The translations under genes were made by a program, and so were the position numbers. From positions 11,284,001 through 11,348,000 of the forward strand of contig CP075495.1 of the NCBI GenBank assembly GCA_021613535.1: 64,000 nucleotides of DNA. The letters run 5' to 3'. The stretch comes from Adineta vaga (lineage: Eukaryota; Animalia; Rotifera). Below are positions 324-6,786 of this stretch, in pieces; position 1 is the first letter of the stretch; each line of letters begins with the position of its first letter. The notes under the pieces are model-generated. The model made no database searches and was not told the DNA's origin. It saw only the letters and a list, made by a program, of their open reading frames with translations.

Positions 324-951
324 GTTGTTGAAAAACAAATTCTATTTGTTTGCTAGGCTGCTTGTTATTCAACAGATATTCACATACACCAGTGCTCACT
401 CTTTTATACGAGACTTCTTTTATTTCCCTACTCTCCGTTCTTTTTCGTCGTCAATAGTAAGAAGAGAAAAGAAGAAAAAAAGAAAGAGAGGTAGAAAATG
501 TCGCTAAGCGTGTCATACAACGATTGTATTCGAAATATTTTATAGAATAAAATAAAAGGAAATCAATTTCTATCGAATAGAATATATAAAATAAATATGT
601 ATCATATTGATTGTTTGATATGCGACTGTCATGGAGAAGTTTTCTGGTTATAGTTAGTTAATGAATTTATATGAATGAAGTAAAAGATTCATAGTAGATG
701 CTCTATAGATGTTATGTAAAATTTGAAATGTTGCAAGAATAAGTATTGTCGCACTCTTTTAACTCTTAGAAAAAGAAACTCAAGGTTATATTGTTCCCGA
801 TTTCCATATTATTTTATAGAAACAATGATAGAAAAACAGAACACACAAAGATTATTGTTATTCTTAGAGTATTTTCATTCCGTACCTTAAAAATCATACA
901 TAAAAACATATATGAATATTCAAGTTTTTTCTCTCTCTCTCGTAAGTAATT

Positions 952-2515
952 CTATTTGAGTGTATTCAACAGATTCCATATTTTTTGACGCATAACACTT
1001 GTCGCACCATTATAATTATTTGTTATAATTGAAAAAACCTGGTCATTAATATACCCAGAATACGAGAGTACATTACTAATGAAACCACTTTTCATTCGAA
1101 TTCCATTTATTATTGGCAATGCACGTTCAAACGATGAAAACCATGATGCACGTTCTCGAACATTATGTAGAACACGAACGATTGCCCATGTTGTTATACG
1201 ATTTTGTGGCGATAAACCTGATCCATCTCTAGTAGCAACTGCTGTTGGTTCAATACCATGTTCACTATTACAGTATGTCGGTAGAACACGATTCATACTT
1301 GTATTCATCATATTAGCAATAGTTTTTATCAACACCTCACCATACATATTGATGCTTATTTGTTCAAACCAATAGACTATCTCACTCATCGGTGGTGATT
1401 CATATACATCGAGCATTATTCGGTTATTAGTTACGCCTTCATTAGTACGATAGCTAATTTTAATTGGCATGGATTTTGACCATTGCATACTTTGACGAAG
1501 TTCATCAGCAATGAATAATGCTGAATTCGGTACAGCACCTCCAATAGAGAAATTTTGTGGGGAATCAATACCTAAAGATCCACGTAAATAACCATGATTA
1601 CTATCAGGACCTAAATAAACATCAGCAAGATCTCCGCTACCAACAGAACCCGTGATCAGCTCATTTGTAAATGTTACTGATGGTGGTAAATTTTGATAGC
1701 CAACAAGAGTAACAGGACTTCCAACAGTTGAGCCGGGTGAAAGAAAAAGACGAAATTGATTTTCTCTCCAGTTCAGTGCACTACTGCCAGCTGCATAATA
1801 GTTTCTAAAATAAAATGCATTCTGTTAAAAACGACATAGCATTAAATTAGTTTTTTTACCCTAAGCCACCCCATGGATATCCATCCGGTACCGATTGTGT
1901 TTGGCCTGGCCACACACTTAGATCTACAATGATACCTCGACATTCTTTAATTCCTTTCCTTCTTATAGCATTTAGCCAACGTTCCATGATAATTTCACCT
2001 TTCGTCTCATTCCATCGCCAACTTCCTAAACTAGGATCACCACTTCCTATACATTCACAAAATATAAATCTTTCTCAAATCATCACTTCTATAAAAGAAT
2101 TCTTTCTCACCGACAATATAGATATAGCCATTGAGAATACCAAGTGAGTTAATATTACCTGAATATTGTAATAAAGTTTTGTATCGGTAATCCGTTCCCA
2201 AGTAATGGAGAGCAGCTGCGCCAGTCACACTTTTCATTGTTGACGCTGGTGAAAGTCCGAGATCTTTATTAAATGAAAATGTAATACTGCCAGTTGAGTT
2301 ATCAAAAATCGTTATTGAATAGGCTGCATTGAACAATTGCGGATCTTGCGTAAAATTTGTCCAGACGGCTGTGAAATTTAAATTTTCGATGGCATGTGTG
2401 CATCGTTGAATAAAAGACAGCGCAATAATAATAGTAAGAAATTGTATCTGAATATCAGTTCTATAAAATCTTTCTTGTTAGGATATCTTTTACTTACCTT
2501 CAGTCTTGATCCCAT
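952..2515 (-). CDS. dacB: Secreted D-Ala-D-Ala carboxypeptidase/endopeptidase (PBP4/DacB, peptidase S13), copy A, ~464 aa
   Basis: Exons 2515-2498, 2447-2111, 2046-1860 and 1804-952 join in frame via GT-AG introns. Signal-like N-terminus (MGSRLKIQFLTIIIALSFIQRCTHA); SxxK (PASTMK), GSGDPSLGS, SxN (SINMYGE), DGSGLSPQN and KSG motifs. Confidence 0.92.
1914..2219. repeat. 306-bp near-identical direct repeat, copy 1 (copy 2 at 3809-4114)
   Basis: By eye identical at offset 1895 except 2108 C / 4003 T. Spans intron 2 of both dacB paralogs. Confidence 0.9.
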
Positions 2516-2849
2516 CGTCAAATATAACGAATGAAATCATCACATAAAAATATGATGCAGTTTTGTAATCTCTTATCGAAATCATTTATTTGCTTATAAC
2601 AAAGGCCATACAAATCTTATACTTGTCAATATTGTGAGAATGCTAAGACTATATATTATTGCGTTTGATAAAAGAAAACCAAAAGAAGTATTACTTTGAT
2701 CTAGTTATCACTATGCGTTTATTAAAATATATATCGATAGAAATATGAAAACTCTTATGTTCTTTTTTCTTCACAACATAAATGGGAATATTACATCAAT
2801 GTAAATTTTATGTACATGTATATTGAACTTCTGATAGTACTTTTAAAAA

Positions 2850-4419
2850 CTAGTTGAGTTTATCTAATAGGTCAAATATTTTTTGTCGCATAAGATTTCG
2901 TTGTCCATTAAAATTATTAGTAATGATTGAAAATACTTGATTATTAACATAGCCAGCGTATGAAAGGGCGTTATGAATATATCCACTTTTCATACGAATT
3001 CCATTGATAGTTGGTAATGCACGTTCAAATATTGGAAACCATGATGCATACTTTCGCACATTATACAAAACACGTGCGATTGCTCGAGTTGTGATGTGAT
3101 TTTCCGGTGATAAACCTGATCCATCTATGGTTGCTACTTCTGCCTGTACAATACCATGTTCTTTTTCGCAATATGTTGGTAATATTCTATCGATACTGGA
3201 GTTTATTTCATGAGCAATCGTTTTTACTAATACTTCACCATACATGTTAATGCTTACTTGTTCAAACCAATAGACTATCTCACTCATCGGTGGTGATTCA
3301 TACAAATCGAGTAGTATTCGATTACTGGTTACATCTTCATTAGTACGATAGATAGTTTTAATTGGCATAGATTTTGACCATTGCATACTTTGACGAAGTT
3401 CGTCACCGATATACAATCCTGAATTCGGTATAGCACCTCCAATAGAGAAATTTTTCGCTGTATCGATGCTTAATGTACCACGTAAATAACCATGTGTACC
3501 ATCAGGTGCTAAATATAAATTTGTACGATCTCCGGTACCTGTAGGACCAGTTACGATTTCATTAATTAATTCTACTGTTGGAGGTGAACGATCAACGTAA
3601 ACAAGAGTAACAGAACTTCCAACAGTTGGGCCGGGTGAAAGAAAAAGACGAAATTGATTTTCACGCCAGTTTACTGCACTATAACCCGTGCCATAATGAT
3701 TTCTGTATAGATGTAACAATACAATATTAAAAACAAATAGGTTTTGGAGCTCACCCTAGATCTCCCCATGGATATCCACTTGGTATTGTTTGTGTTTGAC
3801 CTGACCATACACTTAGATCTACAATGATACCTCGACATTCTTTAATTCCTTTCCTTCTTATAGCATTTAGCCAACGTTCCATGATAATTTCACCTTTCGT
3901 CTCATTCCATCGCCAACTTCCTAAACTAGGATCACCACTTCCTATACATTCACAAAATATAAATCTTTCTCAAATCATCACTTCTATAAAAGAATTCTTT
4001 CTTACCGACAATATAGATATAGCCATTGAGAATACCAAGTGAGTTAATATTACCTGAATATTGTAATAAAGTTTTGTATCGGTAATCCGTTCCCAAGTAA
4101 TGGAGAGCAGCTGCACCTGTTACAGTTTTTAGAGTCGATGCAGGTGCAAGACCGAGATTTTCATTGTAGGAAAATATACTATTGCCAGTTGAATTATCAA
4201 GAATAGTAATTGAAAATGTAGCATATGATAATTGAGGATCCTGTGTAAAATTAATCCATGCGGCTGAAAAGTTCGTATTTACTGCAGCATACGTCTGATA
4301 TTCAATAAATAGAGTATTGACAAGAATGAAAAGAATTTTCTAGAAAGCAAAGAGAGATCTTTTAATATATAAACTGATTTCTGAAAGTTTCGTTTCTTTA
4401 CCATTGCATATTGCTCCAT
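2850..4419 (-). CDS. dacB: Secreted D-Ala-D-Ala carboxypeptidase/endopeptidase (PBP4/DacB, peptidase S13), copy B, ~463 aa
   Basis: Exons 4419-4402, 4339-4006, 3941-3755 and 3702-2850, with the same three intron positions as copy A. Motifs PASTLK, SINMYGE, DGSGLSPEN and RMKSGY. Confidence 0.92.
3809..4114. repeat. 306-bp near-identical direct repeat, copy 2
   Basis: Matches 1914-2219. The shadow ORFs 1929-2147 and 3824-4042 translate identically. Confidence 0.9.
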
Positions 4420-4939
4420 TCGTATTGAATAATGTTGATATAGACACCTCGCTTGAAAGAAAGTTTTCTATTCTTTTTCTTATCAAGTGTACATATGATA
4501 AAGATTATTGAAAAGAGGCAAACGGATTAAATCATACTGAATAAATATCACCTGGTCACCTAAAACATGTAGGAAAGCAAATACTACTCTCCTTTTCTTT
4601 CACTCACTCATTCTTTGTTTTTCTTCATACACTCAGTAAAATATCGAATTGTTTTCAATCTATTTTTTTTCCATATTTACTTTGGAATTTCTCGCGACCA
4701 TTTACATTCATTTGTATATATATATATAGATAAGTGGACATGATCTTTTTATTTTTATTGCCAGTGTGAAAAGAGTTATACGTTTATGTTCAGTCTAGTC
4801 TCCTACTAACGAATGTTTAACAAGAAAATTATCCATTAAAGTGGTATCATATGACTTTATTTATCAAGAACATCACAAATGATCACCATTAACAAAAGAA
4901 AAACTATATAGCAGAATAATTTTAATAAAAACACATTTT

Positions 4940-6786
4940 TCAGACTAATTTCAAAGTTGATTTTTTTTCTGTATTCTCATCTAGAGAATTTGGCGCATTT
5001 TGAACATATGTATATGATTGAACGTTTTGTTGATGTTGTCTTTGAGCATAAACAGCTTCACGAAAGAAACGAAATACATTGGAATCTGTATGACCAATTG
5101 TAAAAGCTGAATGTTGGATTAAAAATCGCATACTAACAAGAAATTGTTCAAAGCCAATTCGATGAAATGGATCAAAACATTGTTGTGGTGCTAAGACATT
5201 GTAGAGAATATCTCTTCCACGTAGATGTTCTCGTGCATATGGCTCATCTTTACCTTTCGAATTTGGATCTGCATAATCTCGAAATGATTGCATAACAGAT
5301 GTATCATCTGTCATTATAAAAATATAGTCAAATTTTTTCTTTTGACGCTGTTCTTCGTCAACAATGCCTTTAACATATAAGGAGAGATTACGCCAATGTT
5401 GATGTTTAGCCCAAAATGAATCTTCACTTGATTTATCACCTCGACGAATATATAAGCCAGCCAGTTTATCAAATACATTTTTATTCGACGAAATCGTATG
5501 TTTATCCGTTAAATAACTTGACCAATATTGAGCTAATACGCGTGTACCAAATTCAATACGTGGTGCATTTTGTGAACCAAAAAATAATACAAACATATAA
5601 CGAAGAAACGAACCAAAAACATAATCTTGCCAAGTTAATTTGTAATTTTTTTTTGTTACTAAGAGATCCGAAGAAAATGCATCAGGTTTATTCGTATTAA
5701 CCCATTCACCAATCGGAACATCTTTGGCACCTTTTGGAGCATAAATATGTTCATCAGAATGATCAGTGAGGATTTTAAAAGAAGAATCATAAGCAACCGA
5801 TGTTTTTTTTCGATCAAATAACCATTTTCGTATCGGTACATGATGATAGTCCATTTTCCAGAATTCGCTCGACGATAAAACACGATCTTCTGTATTATTT
5901 CTATTTTCCCACAAACCCTTGGTTGTTGCAATTTGTATTGCATTATTTTCTGTGTCAATAAGGTTTTTCATACTGATCATTTCAGGTTCGTTTTCGTATG
6001 CTGAACAAATTGAAATCGGAAGAAAATAACGTTTGATACCTTCACTTAAGAAATCGTCTTTTTCACCACGTTCACTACTGAATCGAGTACCACGTGGTAC
6101 ACCAATACGTGAACTATACAGTGTCTGACCGAATTGAGCAATAAAGCAAAGAACACGACTAAAGAATCCTGACCAATGTTGATGTAAAACAAACATAGAT
6201 CGTGCACGACAAATTTTTAATATTTCTTCTTTCTTCATTGATCCATGTTGGATTTCATCAACATGTGGAAATTGTTTTTCCGAAAGATATTTTAGCATTT
6301 CATCTTCAGCAATTTTATTCCATCGAATATCACCTTGTTCATCAAGCCAGAGAATAGGAGCATTTGACTGACGAAATGTTTGTTCATTATATGTTAAAGT
6401 TTCACTTATGTATTCACGTTTCACTCTCGATTTAACAAGTTCAGTAGGAGAAATCCTAGAATAATCAAATAACTTTCAATAAATTAGAGTTTAATATTCT
6501 GTAGAAAAATACATTGAATTGAAGTTAGTCTTAAAATGAAAAATATTTTCACTTACCTCACTGTACGAAATTGCAATTCAATAAGTTCATCGTACATTGG
6601 GGTATCTTTGAGTGGTAATGATGAAGTTGTTAATCGTTCATCTTTTATTGATGAAGAAGGATATACTCTATCGTCTGTAAGATATGGTTGATCGGCTGAA
6701 GAGGCCCATTTTCGGAATATATAGATGATAACTAGTGTACCAACTAGAAATGTAAAACCTCGAATAGCTGAGACACGAATGAGCAT
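4940..6786 (-). CDS. Type II membrane GDP-fucose-dependent fucosyltransferase (GT23/FUT8-NodZ-like clan), ~581 aa
   Basis: Exons 6786-6557 and 6455-4940. N-terminal TM (GFTFLVGTLVIIYIF); motif I GLYIRRGDK, motif II IFIMTDD, motif III SAFTIGHTDSNVFR. Confidence 0.75.

What the first reader, a model, noticed from the sequence alone, without database searches (positions are those of the whole stretch)
952..4419. Tandem pair of domesticated, secreted bacterial penicillin-binding proteins (DacB/PBP4) in an animal genome
Seen: two complete S13 peptidase genes with intact SxxK, SxN and KSG motifs. Each has three spliceosomal introns at identical positions, a signal-like N-terminus and N-glycosylation sequons (NFT, NST). 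Established: PBP4/DacB trims D-Ala-D-Ala and cleaves peptidoglycan cross-links, and animals make no peptidoglycan. Inference: an old bacterial gene transfer, intronised before duplication and repurposed as a secreted wall-degrading digestive or immune enzyme (or a beta-lactam sink). The GLAPASTLK/GSGDPSLGSW context recalls Bacteroidota DacB from memory only.
Basis: partly seen in the sequence, partly recalled or inferred. Interest (0 to 1): 0.8.

Follow-up and report, generated by a model that had tools for sequence, protein, structure and literature searches.

The report
Rotifer genes for bacterial PBP4 peptidases
The bdelloid rotifer Adineta vaga carries two adjacent, expressed, intron-bearing genes for secreted penicillin-binding-protein-4-type peptidases, taken long ago from Bacteroidota bacteria; they most likely cut bacterial cell-wall peptides, which makes them a clean but unsurprising example of the gene transfer these animals are known for.

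Summary
Window 952-2515 (copy A, 464 aa) and 2850-4419 (copy B, 463 aa), both on the minus strand, each have four exons and three GT-AG introns at the same codons and phases. Both encode complete Peptidase_S13 (PBP4/DacB) proteins with SxxK, SxN and KSG boxes and a signal-peptide-like N-terminus.

The genome is Adineta vaga; copy B equals the public protein I4U23_009283. Transcript-like assemblies carry the spliced forms, and a DNA assembly does not.

The same gene order occurs in A. ricciae (tandem pair) and Rotaria sordida (one intact gene plus a decayed fragment).

All 17 bdelloid S13 proteins form one clade (100/99) inside a Sphingobacteriaceae + Chitinophagaceae group. Introns 2 and 3 are shared by all three bdelloid paralogue clades. 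This points to one ancient transfer that acquired introns before duplication.

Selection is purifying (dN/dS 0.08-0.09 between species). Six N-glycosylation sequons are conserved. A 315-bp gene-conversion tract links the two copies.

Function is inferred, not shown: a secreted DD-carboxy/endopeptidase acting on bacterial peptidoglycan.

I rate it a new member of a known kind; no paper found names it. Other first-reader notes of this scan cover the same stretch, and one covers the region holding the third paralogue.

The parts
952..2515 (-). Copy A gene (ATG to stop), 464 aa Peptidase_S13; exons 2515-2498, 2447-2111, 2046-1860, 1804-952
   Evidence: Model. Pfam hits. Junctions of introns 2 and 3 plus a loose end for intron 1. 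The orthologue A. ricciae P0011 has the same introns.
2850..4419 (-). Copy B gene (ATG to stop), 463 aa Peptidase_S13; exons 4419-4402, 4339-4006, 3941-3755, 3702-2850
   Evidence: Model, identical to public protein P0001, I4U23_009283 of Adineta vaga. Junctions of introns 1 and 3. TIGR00666 scores 125.9 bits against a cut-off of 107.8.
2448..2497 (-). Copy A intron 1 (50 nt, phase 0, after codon 6, inside the signal peptide)
   Evidence: GT..AG. The X1 contig ends at 2449 and continues with TCAGTCTTG, which is exon 1.
2047..2110 (-). Copy A intron 2 (64 nt, phase 1, YIYIV|G)
   Evidence: Joint skipping 64 nt in X1. Same position in all bdelloid paralogues.
1805..1859 (-). Copy A intron 3 (55 nt, phase 2)
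   Evidence: Joint 1804->1860 in X1 and X4; absent from the DNA-like run X10.
4340..4401 (-). Copy B intron 1 (62 nt, phase 0, after codon 6)
   Evidence: Joint 4339->4402 in X4.
3942..4005 (-). Copy B intron 2 (64 nt, phase 1)
   Evidence: GT..AG. Differs from A's intron 2 at one base. The X4 contig joins B exon 3 to A exon 2, a spliced form that is chimeric between the paralogues.
3703..3754 (-). Copy B intron 3 (52 nt, phase 2)
   Evidence: Joint 3702->3755 in X1 and X4.
1905..2219 (-). Gene-conversion tract, copy A side (end of exon 2, intron 2, most of exon 3)
   Evidence: 315 aligned bases with 3 mismatches against B 3800-4114. Identity is about 70-80% in other exons and about 45% in other introns.
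3800..4114 (-). Gene-conversion tract, copy B side
2232..2243 (-). Copy A SxxK box (S75-T-M-K78), predicted nucleophile serine
   Evidence: Invariant S and K in alignment A1. Aligns to PASSLK of B. subtilis PBP4a.
4127..4138 (-). Copy B SxxK box (S74-T-L-K77)
1348..1356 (-). Copy A SxN box (S331-I-N333)
   Evidence: Invariant in A1. Aligns to SNN of PBP4a.
3246..3254 (-). Copy B SxN box (S330-I-N332)
1084..1092 (-). Copy A KSG box (K419-S-G421), equivalent of the KTG box
   Evidence: K and G are invariant and S nearly invariant in A1. In the copy B model the equivalent box sits on a strand that is followed by two more strands and a C-terminal helix.
2982..2990 (-). Copy B KSG box (K418-S-G420)
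2391..2447 (-). Copy A signal-peptide-like segment, exon-2 part (with exon 1 gives MGSRLKIQFLTIIIALSFIQRCTHA)
   Evidence: Read directly from the sequence: charged start, hydrophobic core, small residues at -3/-1. Orthologues keep the pattern. No predictor was run.
4286..4339 (-). Copy B signal-peptide-like segment, exon-2 part (with exon 1 gives MEQYAMKILFILVNTLFIEYQTYA)
   Evidence: Read from the sequence; orthologues.
2516..2849 (-). Intergenic spacer between B's stop and A's ATG (334 bp): B's 3' UTR and A's promoter/5' UTR
   Evidence: Transcript-like runs have no depth across 2451-2704. X1 and X4 contigs of B begin at 2782-2794 and an X5 contig at 2707.

Best explanation
These are two tandem paralogues of a bacterial class-C type-4 penicillin-binding protein (PBP4/DacB, MEROPS S13). 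A stem-lineage bdelloid rotifer acquired the gene once from a Bacteroidota bacterium of the Sphingobacteriia/Chitinophagia kind. The gene then gained a eukaryotic signal peptide and spliceosomal introns. It duplicated into at least three clades (1a, 1b and C), and clade 1a duplicated in tandem in Adineta. Both window genes are transcribed, spliced and under purifying selection, and they exchange sequence by gene conversion. Inferred mechanism: the proteins enter the secretory pathway, are N-glycosylated and are released, probably into the gut lumen or onto surfaces. There the serine of SxxK, with the SxN and KSG boxes, attacks D-Ala-D-Ala termini and D-Ala-(meso-DAP) cross-links of peptidoglycan from ingested or invading bacteria. 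This would loosen the sacculus alongside the genome's other acquired wall peptidases. Shown here: gene structure, expression, origin, conservation and fold. Inferred: secretion, glycosylation, substrate and physiological role.
For: Family and fold:
- PF02113 scores 149 bits and TIGR00666 scores 125.9 against a cut-off of 107.8.
- The AF2 model (pLDDT 86) matches PBP4a, R39 and E. coli PBP4 over its full length, TM 0.72-0.76.
- The catalytic boxes are invariant.

Expression and integration:
- Spliced joints appear only in transcript-like runs, while the DNA-like run reads through the introns.
- GC is about 33%, like the rest of the window.
- Eukaryote-type genes lie on the same chromosome-scale contig.
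- The 575-aa gene -> S13 -> VASt gene order is conserved in A. ricciae and R. sordida.

Origin:
- All 80 loci kept, the best of 523 bacterial relatives, are Bacteroidota at 36-42% identity.
- The bdelloid clade has 100/99 support, is a single origin in 100% of bootstrap trees, and sits inside a 100/100 Sphingobacteriaceae + Chitinophagaceae group.
- Introns 2 and 3 are shared by all paralogue clades and both genera.

Selection and secretion:
- dN/dS is 0.078 and 0.093 between A. vaga and A. ricciae orthologues, and 0.26-0.28 between A and B.
- Signal-like N-termini occur in every clade-1 orthologue.
- Clade 1 has 6.8 sequons per protein against 2.4 in bacteria, six of them at conserved positions.

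Context:
- The same genome holds VanY/M15 (3 loci) and Amidase_2 (7 loci) wall-peptide enzymes.
- Eyres 2015 (PMC4632278) lists peptidoglycan catabolism among ancestral bdelloid foreign genes.
- Bdellovibrio uses secreted PBP4 homologues as predatory endopeptidases (PDB 3v39, 5cer).
Against: - No enzyme activity, localisation or tissue expression was tested.
- The signal peptide was judged by eye, not by a predictor.
- The RNA nature of runs X1 and X4 is the tool's guess, although the joints and the empty intergenic region support it.
- dS between species is saturated (about 1.2), so the omega values are approximate.
- The proteins keep the full three-domain housekeeping architecture and do not have the domain-III-less, open active site of the Bdellovibrio predatory enzymes (TM only 0.48). 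An offensive role is therefore not indicated by structure.
- The HMMs do not align the KSG region, so its equivalence to KTG rests on alignment A1 and on the topology of the model.
- The donor lineage is unresolved between Sphingobacteriaceae and Chitinophagaceae (86/56).
Confidence: 0.8

Rival explanations
1. The enzymes act on an endogenous substrate rather than on bacterial walls. They would trim or cross-link D-Ala-D-Ala-ending peptides made by the rotifer's own acquired D-Ala-D-Ala ligase, alanine racemase or non-ribosomal peptide machinery.
For: The genome has a strong Dala_Dala_lig_C match (143 bits, G000:C3:13762311) and further ATP-grasp hits. An alanine racemase transfer in A. vaga is cited in PMC5169069. 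Paralogue C in Adineta has no signal peptide and only 2 sequons, which fits an intracellular enzyme. PBP4-class enzymes such as R39 can also transpeptidate (established knowledge).
Against: No D-Ala-D-Ala-bearing rotifer molecule is known. The window copies A and B have signal peptides and conserved sequons, so they would meet extracellular substrates. The Ddl locus is unlinked, on another chromosome. This was not tested here.
Confidence: 0.08
2. They serve as beta-lactam binders or weak beta-lactamases that protect the animal's food bacteria or microbiota from environmental beta-lactams, or that sense them.
For: All PBPs are acylated by beta-lactams. Solved PBP4 structures with penicillins are the fold's nearest neighbours (2ex9, 2ex6). 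Soil and moss habitats contain beta-lactam producers (general knowledge).
Against: Animals have no beta-lactam target, so a sink brings no obvious benefit. PBP4-type enzymes deacylate slowly. Strong purifying selection across the whole three-domain protein fits a peptide substrate better.
Confidence: 0.04
3. They are catalytically retained but work mainly in immunity, by processing peptidoglycan fragments (removing terminal D-Ala or cutting dimers). This would create or destroy the ligands of peptidoglycan-recognition receptors rather than digest food.
For: The genome has seven Amidase_2 (PGRP-type) loci. DD-carboxypeptidase trimming changes muropeptide stem length, which matters for recognition in other animals (established for insect PGRPs and mammalian NODs).
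Against: The 2021 preprint on the bdelloid response to a fungal pathogen reports little up-regulation of classical immune families and does not mention these genes. No expression data under bacterial challenge were available here.
Confidence: 0.06
4. Bacterial contamination or an assembly artefact rather than rotifer genes.
For: The nearest non-rotifer relatives are all bacterial. Metagenome gene callers label the rotifer exon-4 fragments as bacterial PBP4.
Against: There are three spliceosomal introns per gene, and the spliced forms occur in transcript-like runs only. GC matches the host. The locus lies at 11.28 Mb of a 16.3-Mb chromosome between rotifer genes. Synteny is conserved in two other bdelloid genera. 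Identity to any bacterium is only about 40%.
Confidence: 0.01

Closest known systems
Bacteroidota PBP4/DacB (D-alanyl-D-alanine carboxypeptidase/endopeptidase; Chitinophagaceae and Sphingobacteriaceae, e.g. Niastella, Olivibacter, Sphingobacterium)
   Same: Same length (about 460-480 aa) and the same three boxes, including KSG in place of KTG. The GSGDPSLGSW and DGSGLSP motifs are shared. Identity is 36-43% end to end.
   Different: The rotifer genes have three introns, a eukaryote-style signal peptide split by intron 1, about three times as many N-glycosylation sequons, host-like AT-rich composition, and a chromosomal setting between animal genes.
Solved class-C type-4 PBPs: B. subtilis PBP4a (1W5D), Actinomadura R39 DD-peptidase (1W79), E. 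coli and H. influenzae PBP4 (2EX2, 3A3D)
   Same: Three-domain fold over the full length, TM 0.72-0.76. SxxK and SxN align by sequence.
   Different: Identity is only 18-21%. The segment before the third box is about 20 residues shorter, so the sequence HMMs stop before KSG.
Bdellovibrio predatory DD-endopeptidases Bd0816/Bd3459 (PBP4 homologues secreted into prey; PDB 3V39, 5CER)
   Same: A PBP4-family enzyme exported by a bacterivore to act on another organism's wall. This is the best functional analogy.
   Different: Those enzymes lack domain III and match the model only at TM 0.48. They are bacterial and are paired with an immunity protein, and none is evident next to the rotifer genes.
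Other bacterial wall-hydrolase genes domesticated by eukaryotes: tick/mite dae (Tae amidases), GH25 lysozymes (PMC4241558), Trichomonas NlpC/P60 (bioRxiv 10.1101/320382), and bdelloid foreign genes for peptidoglycan catabolism (PMC4632278)
   Same: Horizontal acquisition of a peptidoglycan-active enzyme by a eukaryote, with added secretion signals and retained catalytic residues.
   Different: The enzyme family differs: here a serine S13 DD-peptidase, which is a penicillin-binding protein, rather than an amidase, a muramidase or a cysteine peptidase. No paper found in the library names an S13 or PBP4 gene in rotifers.

Membership tests
Peptidase S13 / PBP4 (Pfam PF02113; NCBIfam TIGR00666) | Profile score above the curated cut-off | tested here: met
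   P0001 (= copy B): PF02113 149.1 bits against a cut-off of 22.8, and TIGR00666 125.9 against 107.8. Copy A exons 2 and 4 score 45.7 and 66.8 bits. A's orthologue P0011 scores 147.3 and 113.4 bits.
Peptidase S13 / PBP4 | Catalytic boxes SxxK, SxN and K(T/S)G | tested here: met
   STMK/STLK, SIN and KSG are present in both copies. The S and K of the first box, the S and N of the second, and the K and G of the third are invariant in A1. The first two boxes align to PBP4a.
Peptidase S13 / PBP4 | Three-domain fold, with domains II and III inserted into the penicillin-binding domain | tested here: met
   The AF2 model (pLDDT 86.4, pTM 0.85) aligns over about 470-480 columns to 1W5D, 1W79 and 2EX2 at TM 0.72-0.76.
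Peptidase S13 / PBP4 | DD-carboxypeptidase/endopeptidase activity and acylation by beta-lactams | not testable with these tools
   Needs recombinant protein, Bocillin-FL labelling and muropeptide assays.
E. coli-type DacB (NCBIfam NF008322, PRK11113) | Score above the equivalog cut-off (527 bits) | tested here: not met
   92.4 bits for P0001, and 148.5 for the Niastella homologue P0089. The genes belong to the Bacteroidota branch of S13, not the enterobacterial one.
Horizontally acquired, domesticated gene of bdelloid rotifers | Nested within a non-metazoan clade, monophyletic in bdelloids | tested here: met
   No named non-bdelloid eukaryote is among the 120 hits listed. The remaining 77 hits, and eukaryotes in general, were not checked by name.
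Horizontally acquired, domesticated gene of bdelloid rotifers | Integrated in the host genome: introns, host composition, host neighbours, synteny across species | tested here: met
Horizontally acquired, domesticated gene of bdelloid rotifers | Expressed and under purifying selection | tested here: met
   Spliced contigs; dN/dS 0.08-0.28.
Secreted N-glycoprotein | Cleavable signal peptide, no retention signal, used sequons | tested here: inconclusive
   The N-termini look like signal peptides in all clade-1 orthologues, and six sequons are conserved. No signal-peptide predictor was run and no protein data exist.

The most novel reading that the evidence does not exclude
Bdelloid rotifers have assembled, from separate bacterial transfers, the pieces of a D-Ala-D-Ala peptide metabolism of their own: a D-Ala-D-Ala ligase, an alanine racemase, and VanY-type and PBP4-type DD-peptidases. 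On this reading the S13 family does not merely digest food. The secreted pair A/B and the signal-less paralogue C would build, trim or cross-link an endogenous D-amino-acid-containing peptide or matrix, for example a protective extracellular material or a self-made antimicrobial.
Probability: 0.07. Interest if true: 0.75.

Novelty: new member of a known kind. Interest (0 to 1): 0.38.

Why it matters
This is a well-documented case of an animal keeping, expressing and duplicating a true penicillin-binding protein for tens of millions of years. Origin, intron gain, signal-peptide gain, sequon gain, tandem duplication and ongoing gene conversion can all be read from the sequences.

It adds a serine DD-peptidase to the amidases, muramidases and metallopeptidases that eukaryotes are known to have taken from bacteria.

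It also gives a tractable test of how a bacterivorous animal dismantles peptidoglycan cross-links. One practical point: exon-4 fragments of these rotifer genes sit in metagenome catalogues labelled as bacterial PBP4, which can mislead surveys of environmental resistance and wall enzymes.

It does not change the picture of bdelloid gene transfer, which is already known to be massive.

Tried and rejected
- Contamination was rejected on introns, splicing, composition and synteny.
- Two independent transfers for clades 1 and C were rejected. The bdelloids form one clade in all bootstrap trees, and the clades share introns 2 and 3.
- An alternative acceptor for copy A intron 1 (TATAG|AAC) was rejected. 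It puts a stop in frame, and the X1 loose end supports the TTCAG|ATA acceptor.
- An upstream signal-peptide exon for paralogue C in A. vaga was sought and not found. The Rotaria-like hydrophobic segment upstream lies in another frame relative to the donor site.
- Literature searches for bdelloid or rotifer with D-Ala-D-Ala carboxypeptidase or penicillin-binding protein gave no relevant paper. The supplements of PMC12220480 hold no S13 entry.
- GH25 lysozyme and S11 peptidase families were not found in this genome with these profile searches.
- Kinship labels for the outgroup genomes were not available, so the outgroups are unnamed and the donor cannot be narrowed beyond Sphingobacteriia/Chitinophagia.
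- Joined spliced models were never typed into a search tool. Copy B was searched whole only through the identical public protein P0001. Copy A was searched exon by exon by reference, and its joined protein was used only in local scripts built from window.fa. A whole-protein database search of copy A was therefore left out.
Full report
**What is there**

The window is AT-rich throughout, with GC about 0.25-0.34. On the minus strand between 952 and 4419 lie two head-to-tail genes. Reading the three frames and placing GT-AG introns gave two complete models:

| Copy | Exons | Protein | Introns (nt) |
|---|---|---|---|
| A | 2515-2498, 2447-2111, 2046-1860, 1804-952 | 464 aa | 50, 64, 55 |
| B | 4419-4402, 4339-4006, 3941-3755, 3702-2850 | 463 aa | 62, 64, 52 |

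In both copies the introns fall after codon 6 (phase 0), inside the glycine codon after YIYIV (phase 1), and inside the glycine codon before N-[YH]-Y (phase 2).

Searched exon by exon by reference, exons 2 and 4 of both copies match Pfam Peptidase_S13 and NCBIfam PBP4. The short exon 3 matches nothing on its own.

The word search with copy B's exon 4 returned 'hypothetical protein I4U23_009283 [Adineta vaga]' at 100% identity. That 463-aa public protein (P0001) is letter for letter my spliced model of copy B. The window is G000:C2:11284001-11348000 of a six-contig, 100.8-Mb assembly.

**How the spliced models were searched**

- Copy B was searched whole only through P0001, which is a stored public protein.
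- Copy A was searched exon by exon.
- A's joined protein was built from window.fa inside scripts, for local alignments, trees and dN/dS only. A whole-protein database search of copy A was therefore left out.
- A's close orthologue P0011 stands in for it where a whole protein was needed.

**Family, fold and catalytic residues**

Full-length P0001 scores 149 bits on PF02113. It scores 125.9 bits on TIGR00666, above that equivalog's cut-off of 107.8. It falls far below the enterobacterial DacB model NF008322, as does a Niastella homologue.

By sequence, the nearest solved proteins are B. subtilis PBP4a (1e-24), Actinomadura R39, and E. coli and H. influenzae PBP4. ASTLK aligns to PASSLK and SIN aligns to SNN.

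An AlphaFold2 model built on a 16-sequence alignment has pLDDT 86.4 and pTM 0.85. It superposes on those same structures over its full length at TM 0.72-0.76, so all three domains are kept.

In alignment A1, S74, K77, S330, N332, K418 and G420 are invariant. A1 holds six bdelloid proteins and ten other hits, five of which carry Bacteroidota names. The third box is KSG in the bacteria too. The sequence HMMs stop just before it, because this branch has a shorter preceding segment. Its equivalence to KTG therefore rests on the alignment and on its place in the model: a strand followed by two further strands and the C-terminal helix.

**Expression and splicing**

Fifteen of the 18 listed public runs, from six studies, hold at least part of the stretch. 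I laid three transcript-like contig sets (X1, X4, X5) and one DNA-like set (X10, depth about 100) on window 800-4600.
- X1 and X4 carry joints that skip exactly A intron 3 (both runs), A intron 2 (X1), B intron 3 (both runs) and B intron 1 (X4).
- A intron 1 is supported by an X1 contig that runs to 2449 and continues with the letters of exon 1.
- One X4 contig joins B exon 3 to A exon 2. This is a spliced form, but chimeric, which is expected because this part is nearly identical in the two copies.
- X10 reads straight through introns and intergenic DNA with no joints.
- X1 and X4 have no depth across 2451-2704.

The tool only guesses that X1 and X4 are RNA. The pattern fits transcripts and not DNA.

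**Integration in the rotifer genome**

Other ORFs in the window carry Cation_ATPase_C, PAP2 and MAPEG domains.

In A. ricciae, two contigs show the same order: a 575-aa gene, the B orthologue (P0002, 458 aa), the A orthologue (P0011, 464 aa), then a VASt-domain gene. tblastx shows the window's first 8 kb to be collinear with this.

In Rotaria sordida the same flanking genes enclose one intact S13 gene (P0004). About 470 bp downstream lies an exon-2-like remnant with four in-frame stops, a frameshift and a ruined SxxK box (L105:7029-7357).

**Origin**

A pattern scan of about 186,000 species genomes found at least 523 relatives. The best 80 are all Bacteroidota, mostly Chitinophagaceae and Sphingobacteriaceae, at 36-42% identity.

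I built two IQ-TREE trees under LG+C20, one quick with 69 rows and one careful with 55 rows.
- All bdelloid sequences form one clade. These come from A. vaga A, B and C, A. ricciae, A. steineri, four Rotaria species and Didymodactylos. Support is 100/99, and 100% of bootstrap trees give a single origin.
- That clade sits inside a 100/100 group with Sphingobacteriaceae and Chitinophagaceae.
- Which of the two families is nearer is not resolved (86/56).

Within bdelloids there are three clades:
- 1a: A, B and the Rotaria syntenic gene.
- 1b: A. steineri and Rotaria sp.; not found in A. vaga.
- C: a third A. vaga gene at G000:C2:14824451-14826011, 3.5 Mb away.

Exact spliced alignment of five annotated genes, plus my model of C, shows introns 2 and 3 at the same codon and phase in every clade and in both genera. 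The simplest history is one transfer on the bdelloid stem, then intron gain, then duplication.

A and B group together at 97/87, which suggests an Adineta-specific tandem duplication. Two things leave an older duplication possible: the conversion tract and the Rotaria remnant.

**Selection, secretion signals and conversion**

dN/dS by the Nei-Gojobori method:

| Comparison | dN/dS |
|---|---|
| A. vaga A vs A. ricciae A | 0.078 |
| A. vaga B vs A. ricciae B | 0.093 |
| A vs B | 0.28 |
| A vs B, outside the conversion tract | 0.26 |

dS between species is about 1.2, so it is saturated and these omega values are approximate.

Every clade-1 protein begins with a charged start, a hydrophobic core and small residues at -3/-1. 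Intron 1 splits this segment.

Clade-1 proteins carry 6.8 N-x-S/T sequons on average, against 2.4 in the bacterial homologues. Six positions are conserved in 7-10 of the 10 sequences: 29, 36, 55, 130, 264 and 347 of copy B. This fits passage through the secretory pathway but does not prove it.

A 315-bp stretch (A 2219-1905, B 4114-3800) differs at three bases and includes intron 2. The rest of the exons are 70-80% identical and the other introns about 45%. This is a recent gene-conversion tract.

**Function**

Function is inferred. PBP4-class enzymes remove terminal D-Ala and cut D-Ala-(meso-DAP) cross-links, and animals have no such polymer (established knowledge). A secreted copy in a bacterivore most plausibly works on bacterial walls.

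Several observations fit this:
- The genome also holds three VanY/M15 loci and seven Amidase_2 loci.
- Eyres et al. 2015 list peptidoglycan catabolism among ancestral bdelloid foreign genes.
- Bdellovibrio exports PBP4 homologues to attack prey walls (PDB titles).

Against a specialised offensive role, the rotifer proteins keep domain III and resemble housekeeping PBP4s far more than the Bdellovibrio enzymes (TM 0.75 against 0.48).

A minority reading is an endogenous D-Ala-D-Ala substrate. It is prompted by a strong D-Ala-D-Ala-ligase match elsewhere in the genome and by the signal-less paralogue C.

**Novelty**

Bdelloid gene transfer is well known, and other bdelloid copies are machine-named D-Ala-D-Ala carboxypeptidase in UniRef. 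No paper in the searchable library names an S13 or PBP4 gene in rotifers.

The scan's own notes hold two other first-reader entries on this same stretch and one on the region that contains paralogue C. They also hold unverified notes on other wall enzymes in this genome.

I class this as a new member of a known kind, of moderate interest.

Noticed in passing
G000:C2:14824451-14826011 (+) = L001:1125-2685: Third S13 paralogue (copy C, 450 aa by my model, boxes SSMK/SIN/KSG intact). Introns 2 and 3 are at the same positions as in A and B. There is no signal peptide (starts MNHIQQFTQAW) and there are only 2 sequons. A. steineri's orthologues also start without one, while Rotaria orthologues have an extra 5' exon and a hydrophobic N-terminus. 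In A. vaga a similar hydrophobic segment lies upstream in another frame. Expression was not checked.
   Followed up: partly
L001:191-913 (+), just upstream of copy C: A 240-aa ORF that looks to me like an ADP-ribosyltransferase (an R...S-T-S...E-x-E pattern, from memory; no family scan was run).
   Followed up: no
L105:7029-7357 (Rotaria sordida CAJNOO010000126.1): Decayed exon-2-like S13 fragment downstream of the intact gene. It has four in-frame stops and a frameshift, and ASTLK has become VST*K. It is a pseudogene remnant of a second tandem copy, so the tandem duplication may be older than Adineta.
   Followed up: partly
window 4940-6680 (-): Upstream neighbour: a 494-aa open frame plus upstream exon(s). 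It has no Pfam hit at E <= 0.01. It is conserved in the same position in A. ricciae (575 aa) and R. sordida (587 aa). From memory only, its RRGDK...TDD...HTDSN motifs recall GT23-type fucosyltransferases; this was not tested.
   Followed up: no
P0003, P0005, P0007-P0010, P0013-P0044: Dozens of 250-340-aa 'proteins' from JGI/ENA/Logan metagenome contigs, 57-74% identical to exon 4, many labelled bacterial PBP4. They look like exon-4 ORFs of environmental bdelloid rotifers called by prokaryotic gene finders.
   Followed up: no
L103:4527-4596 and L103:6406-6475 (A. ricciae): Intron 2 is 70 nt with the same ends (GTTAGT...GTATAG) in both A. ricciae tandem copies. This hints that the same stretch is also homogenised by conversion in that species. 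Identity of the tract was not measured.
   Followed up: no
G000:C3:13762311-13762814 (-) and seven further loci: Dala_Dala_lig_C matches in the rotifer genome (best 143 bits). Together with three VanY and seven Amidase_2 loci, this shows several D-Ala and peptidoglycan-peptide enzymes of bacterial type in one animal genome.
   Followed up: partly
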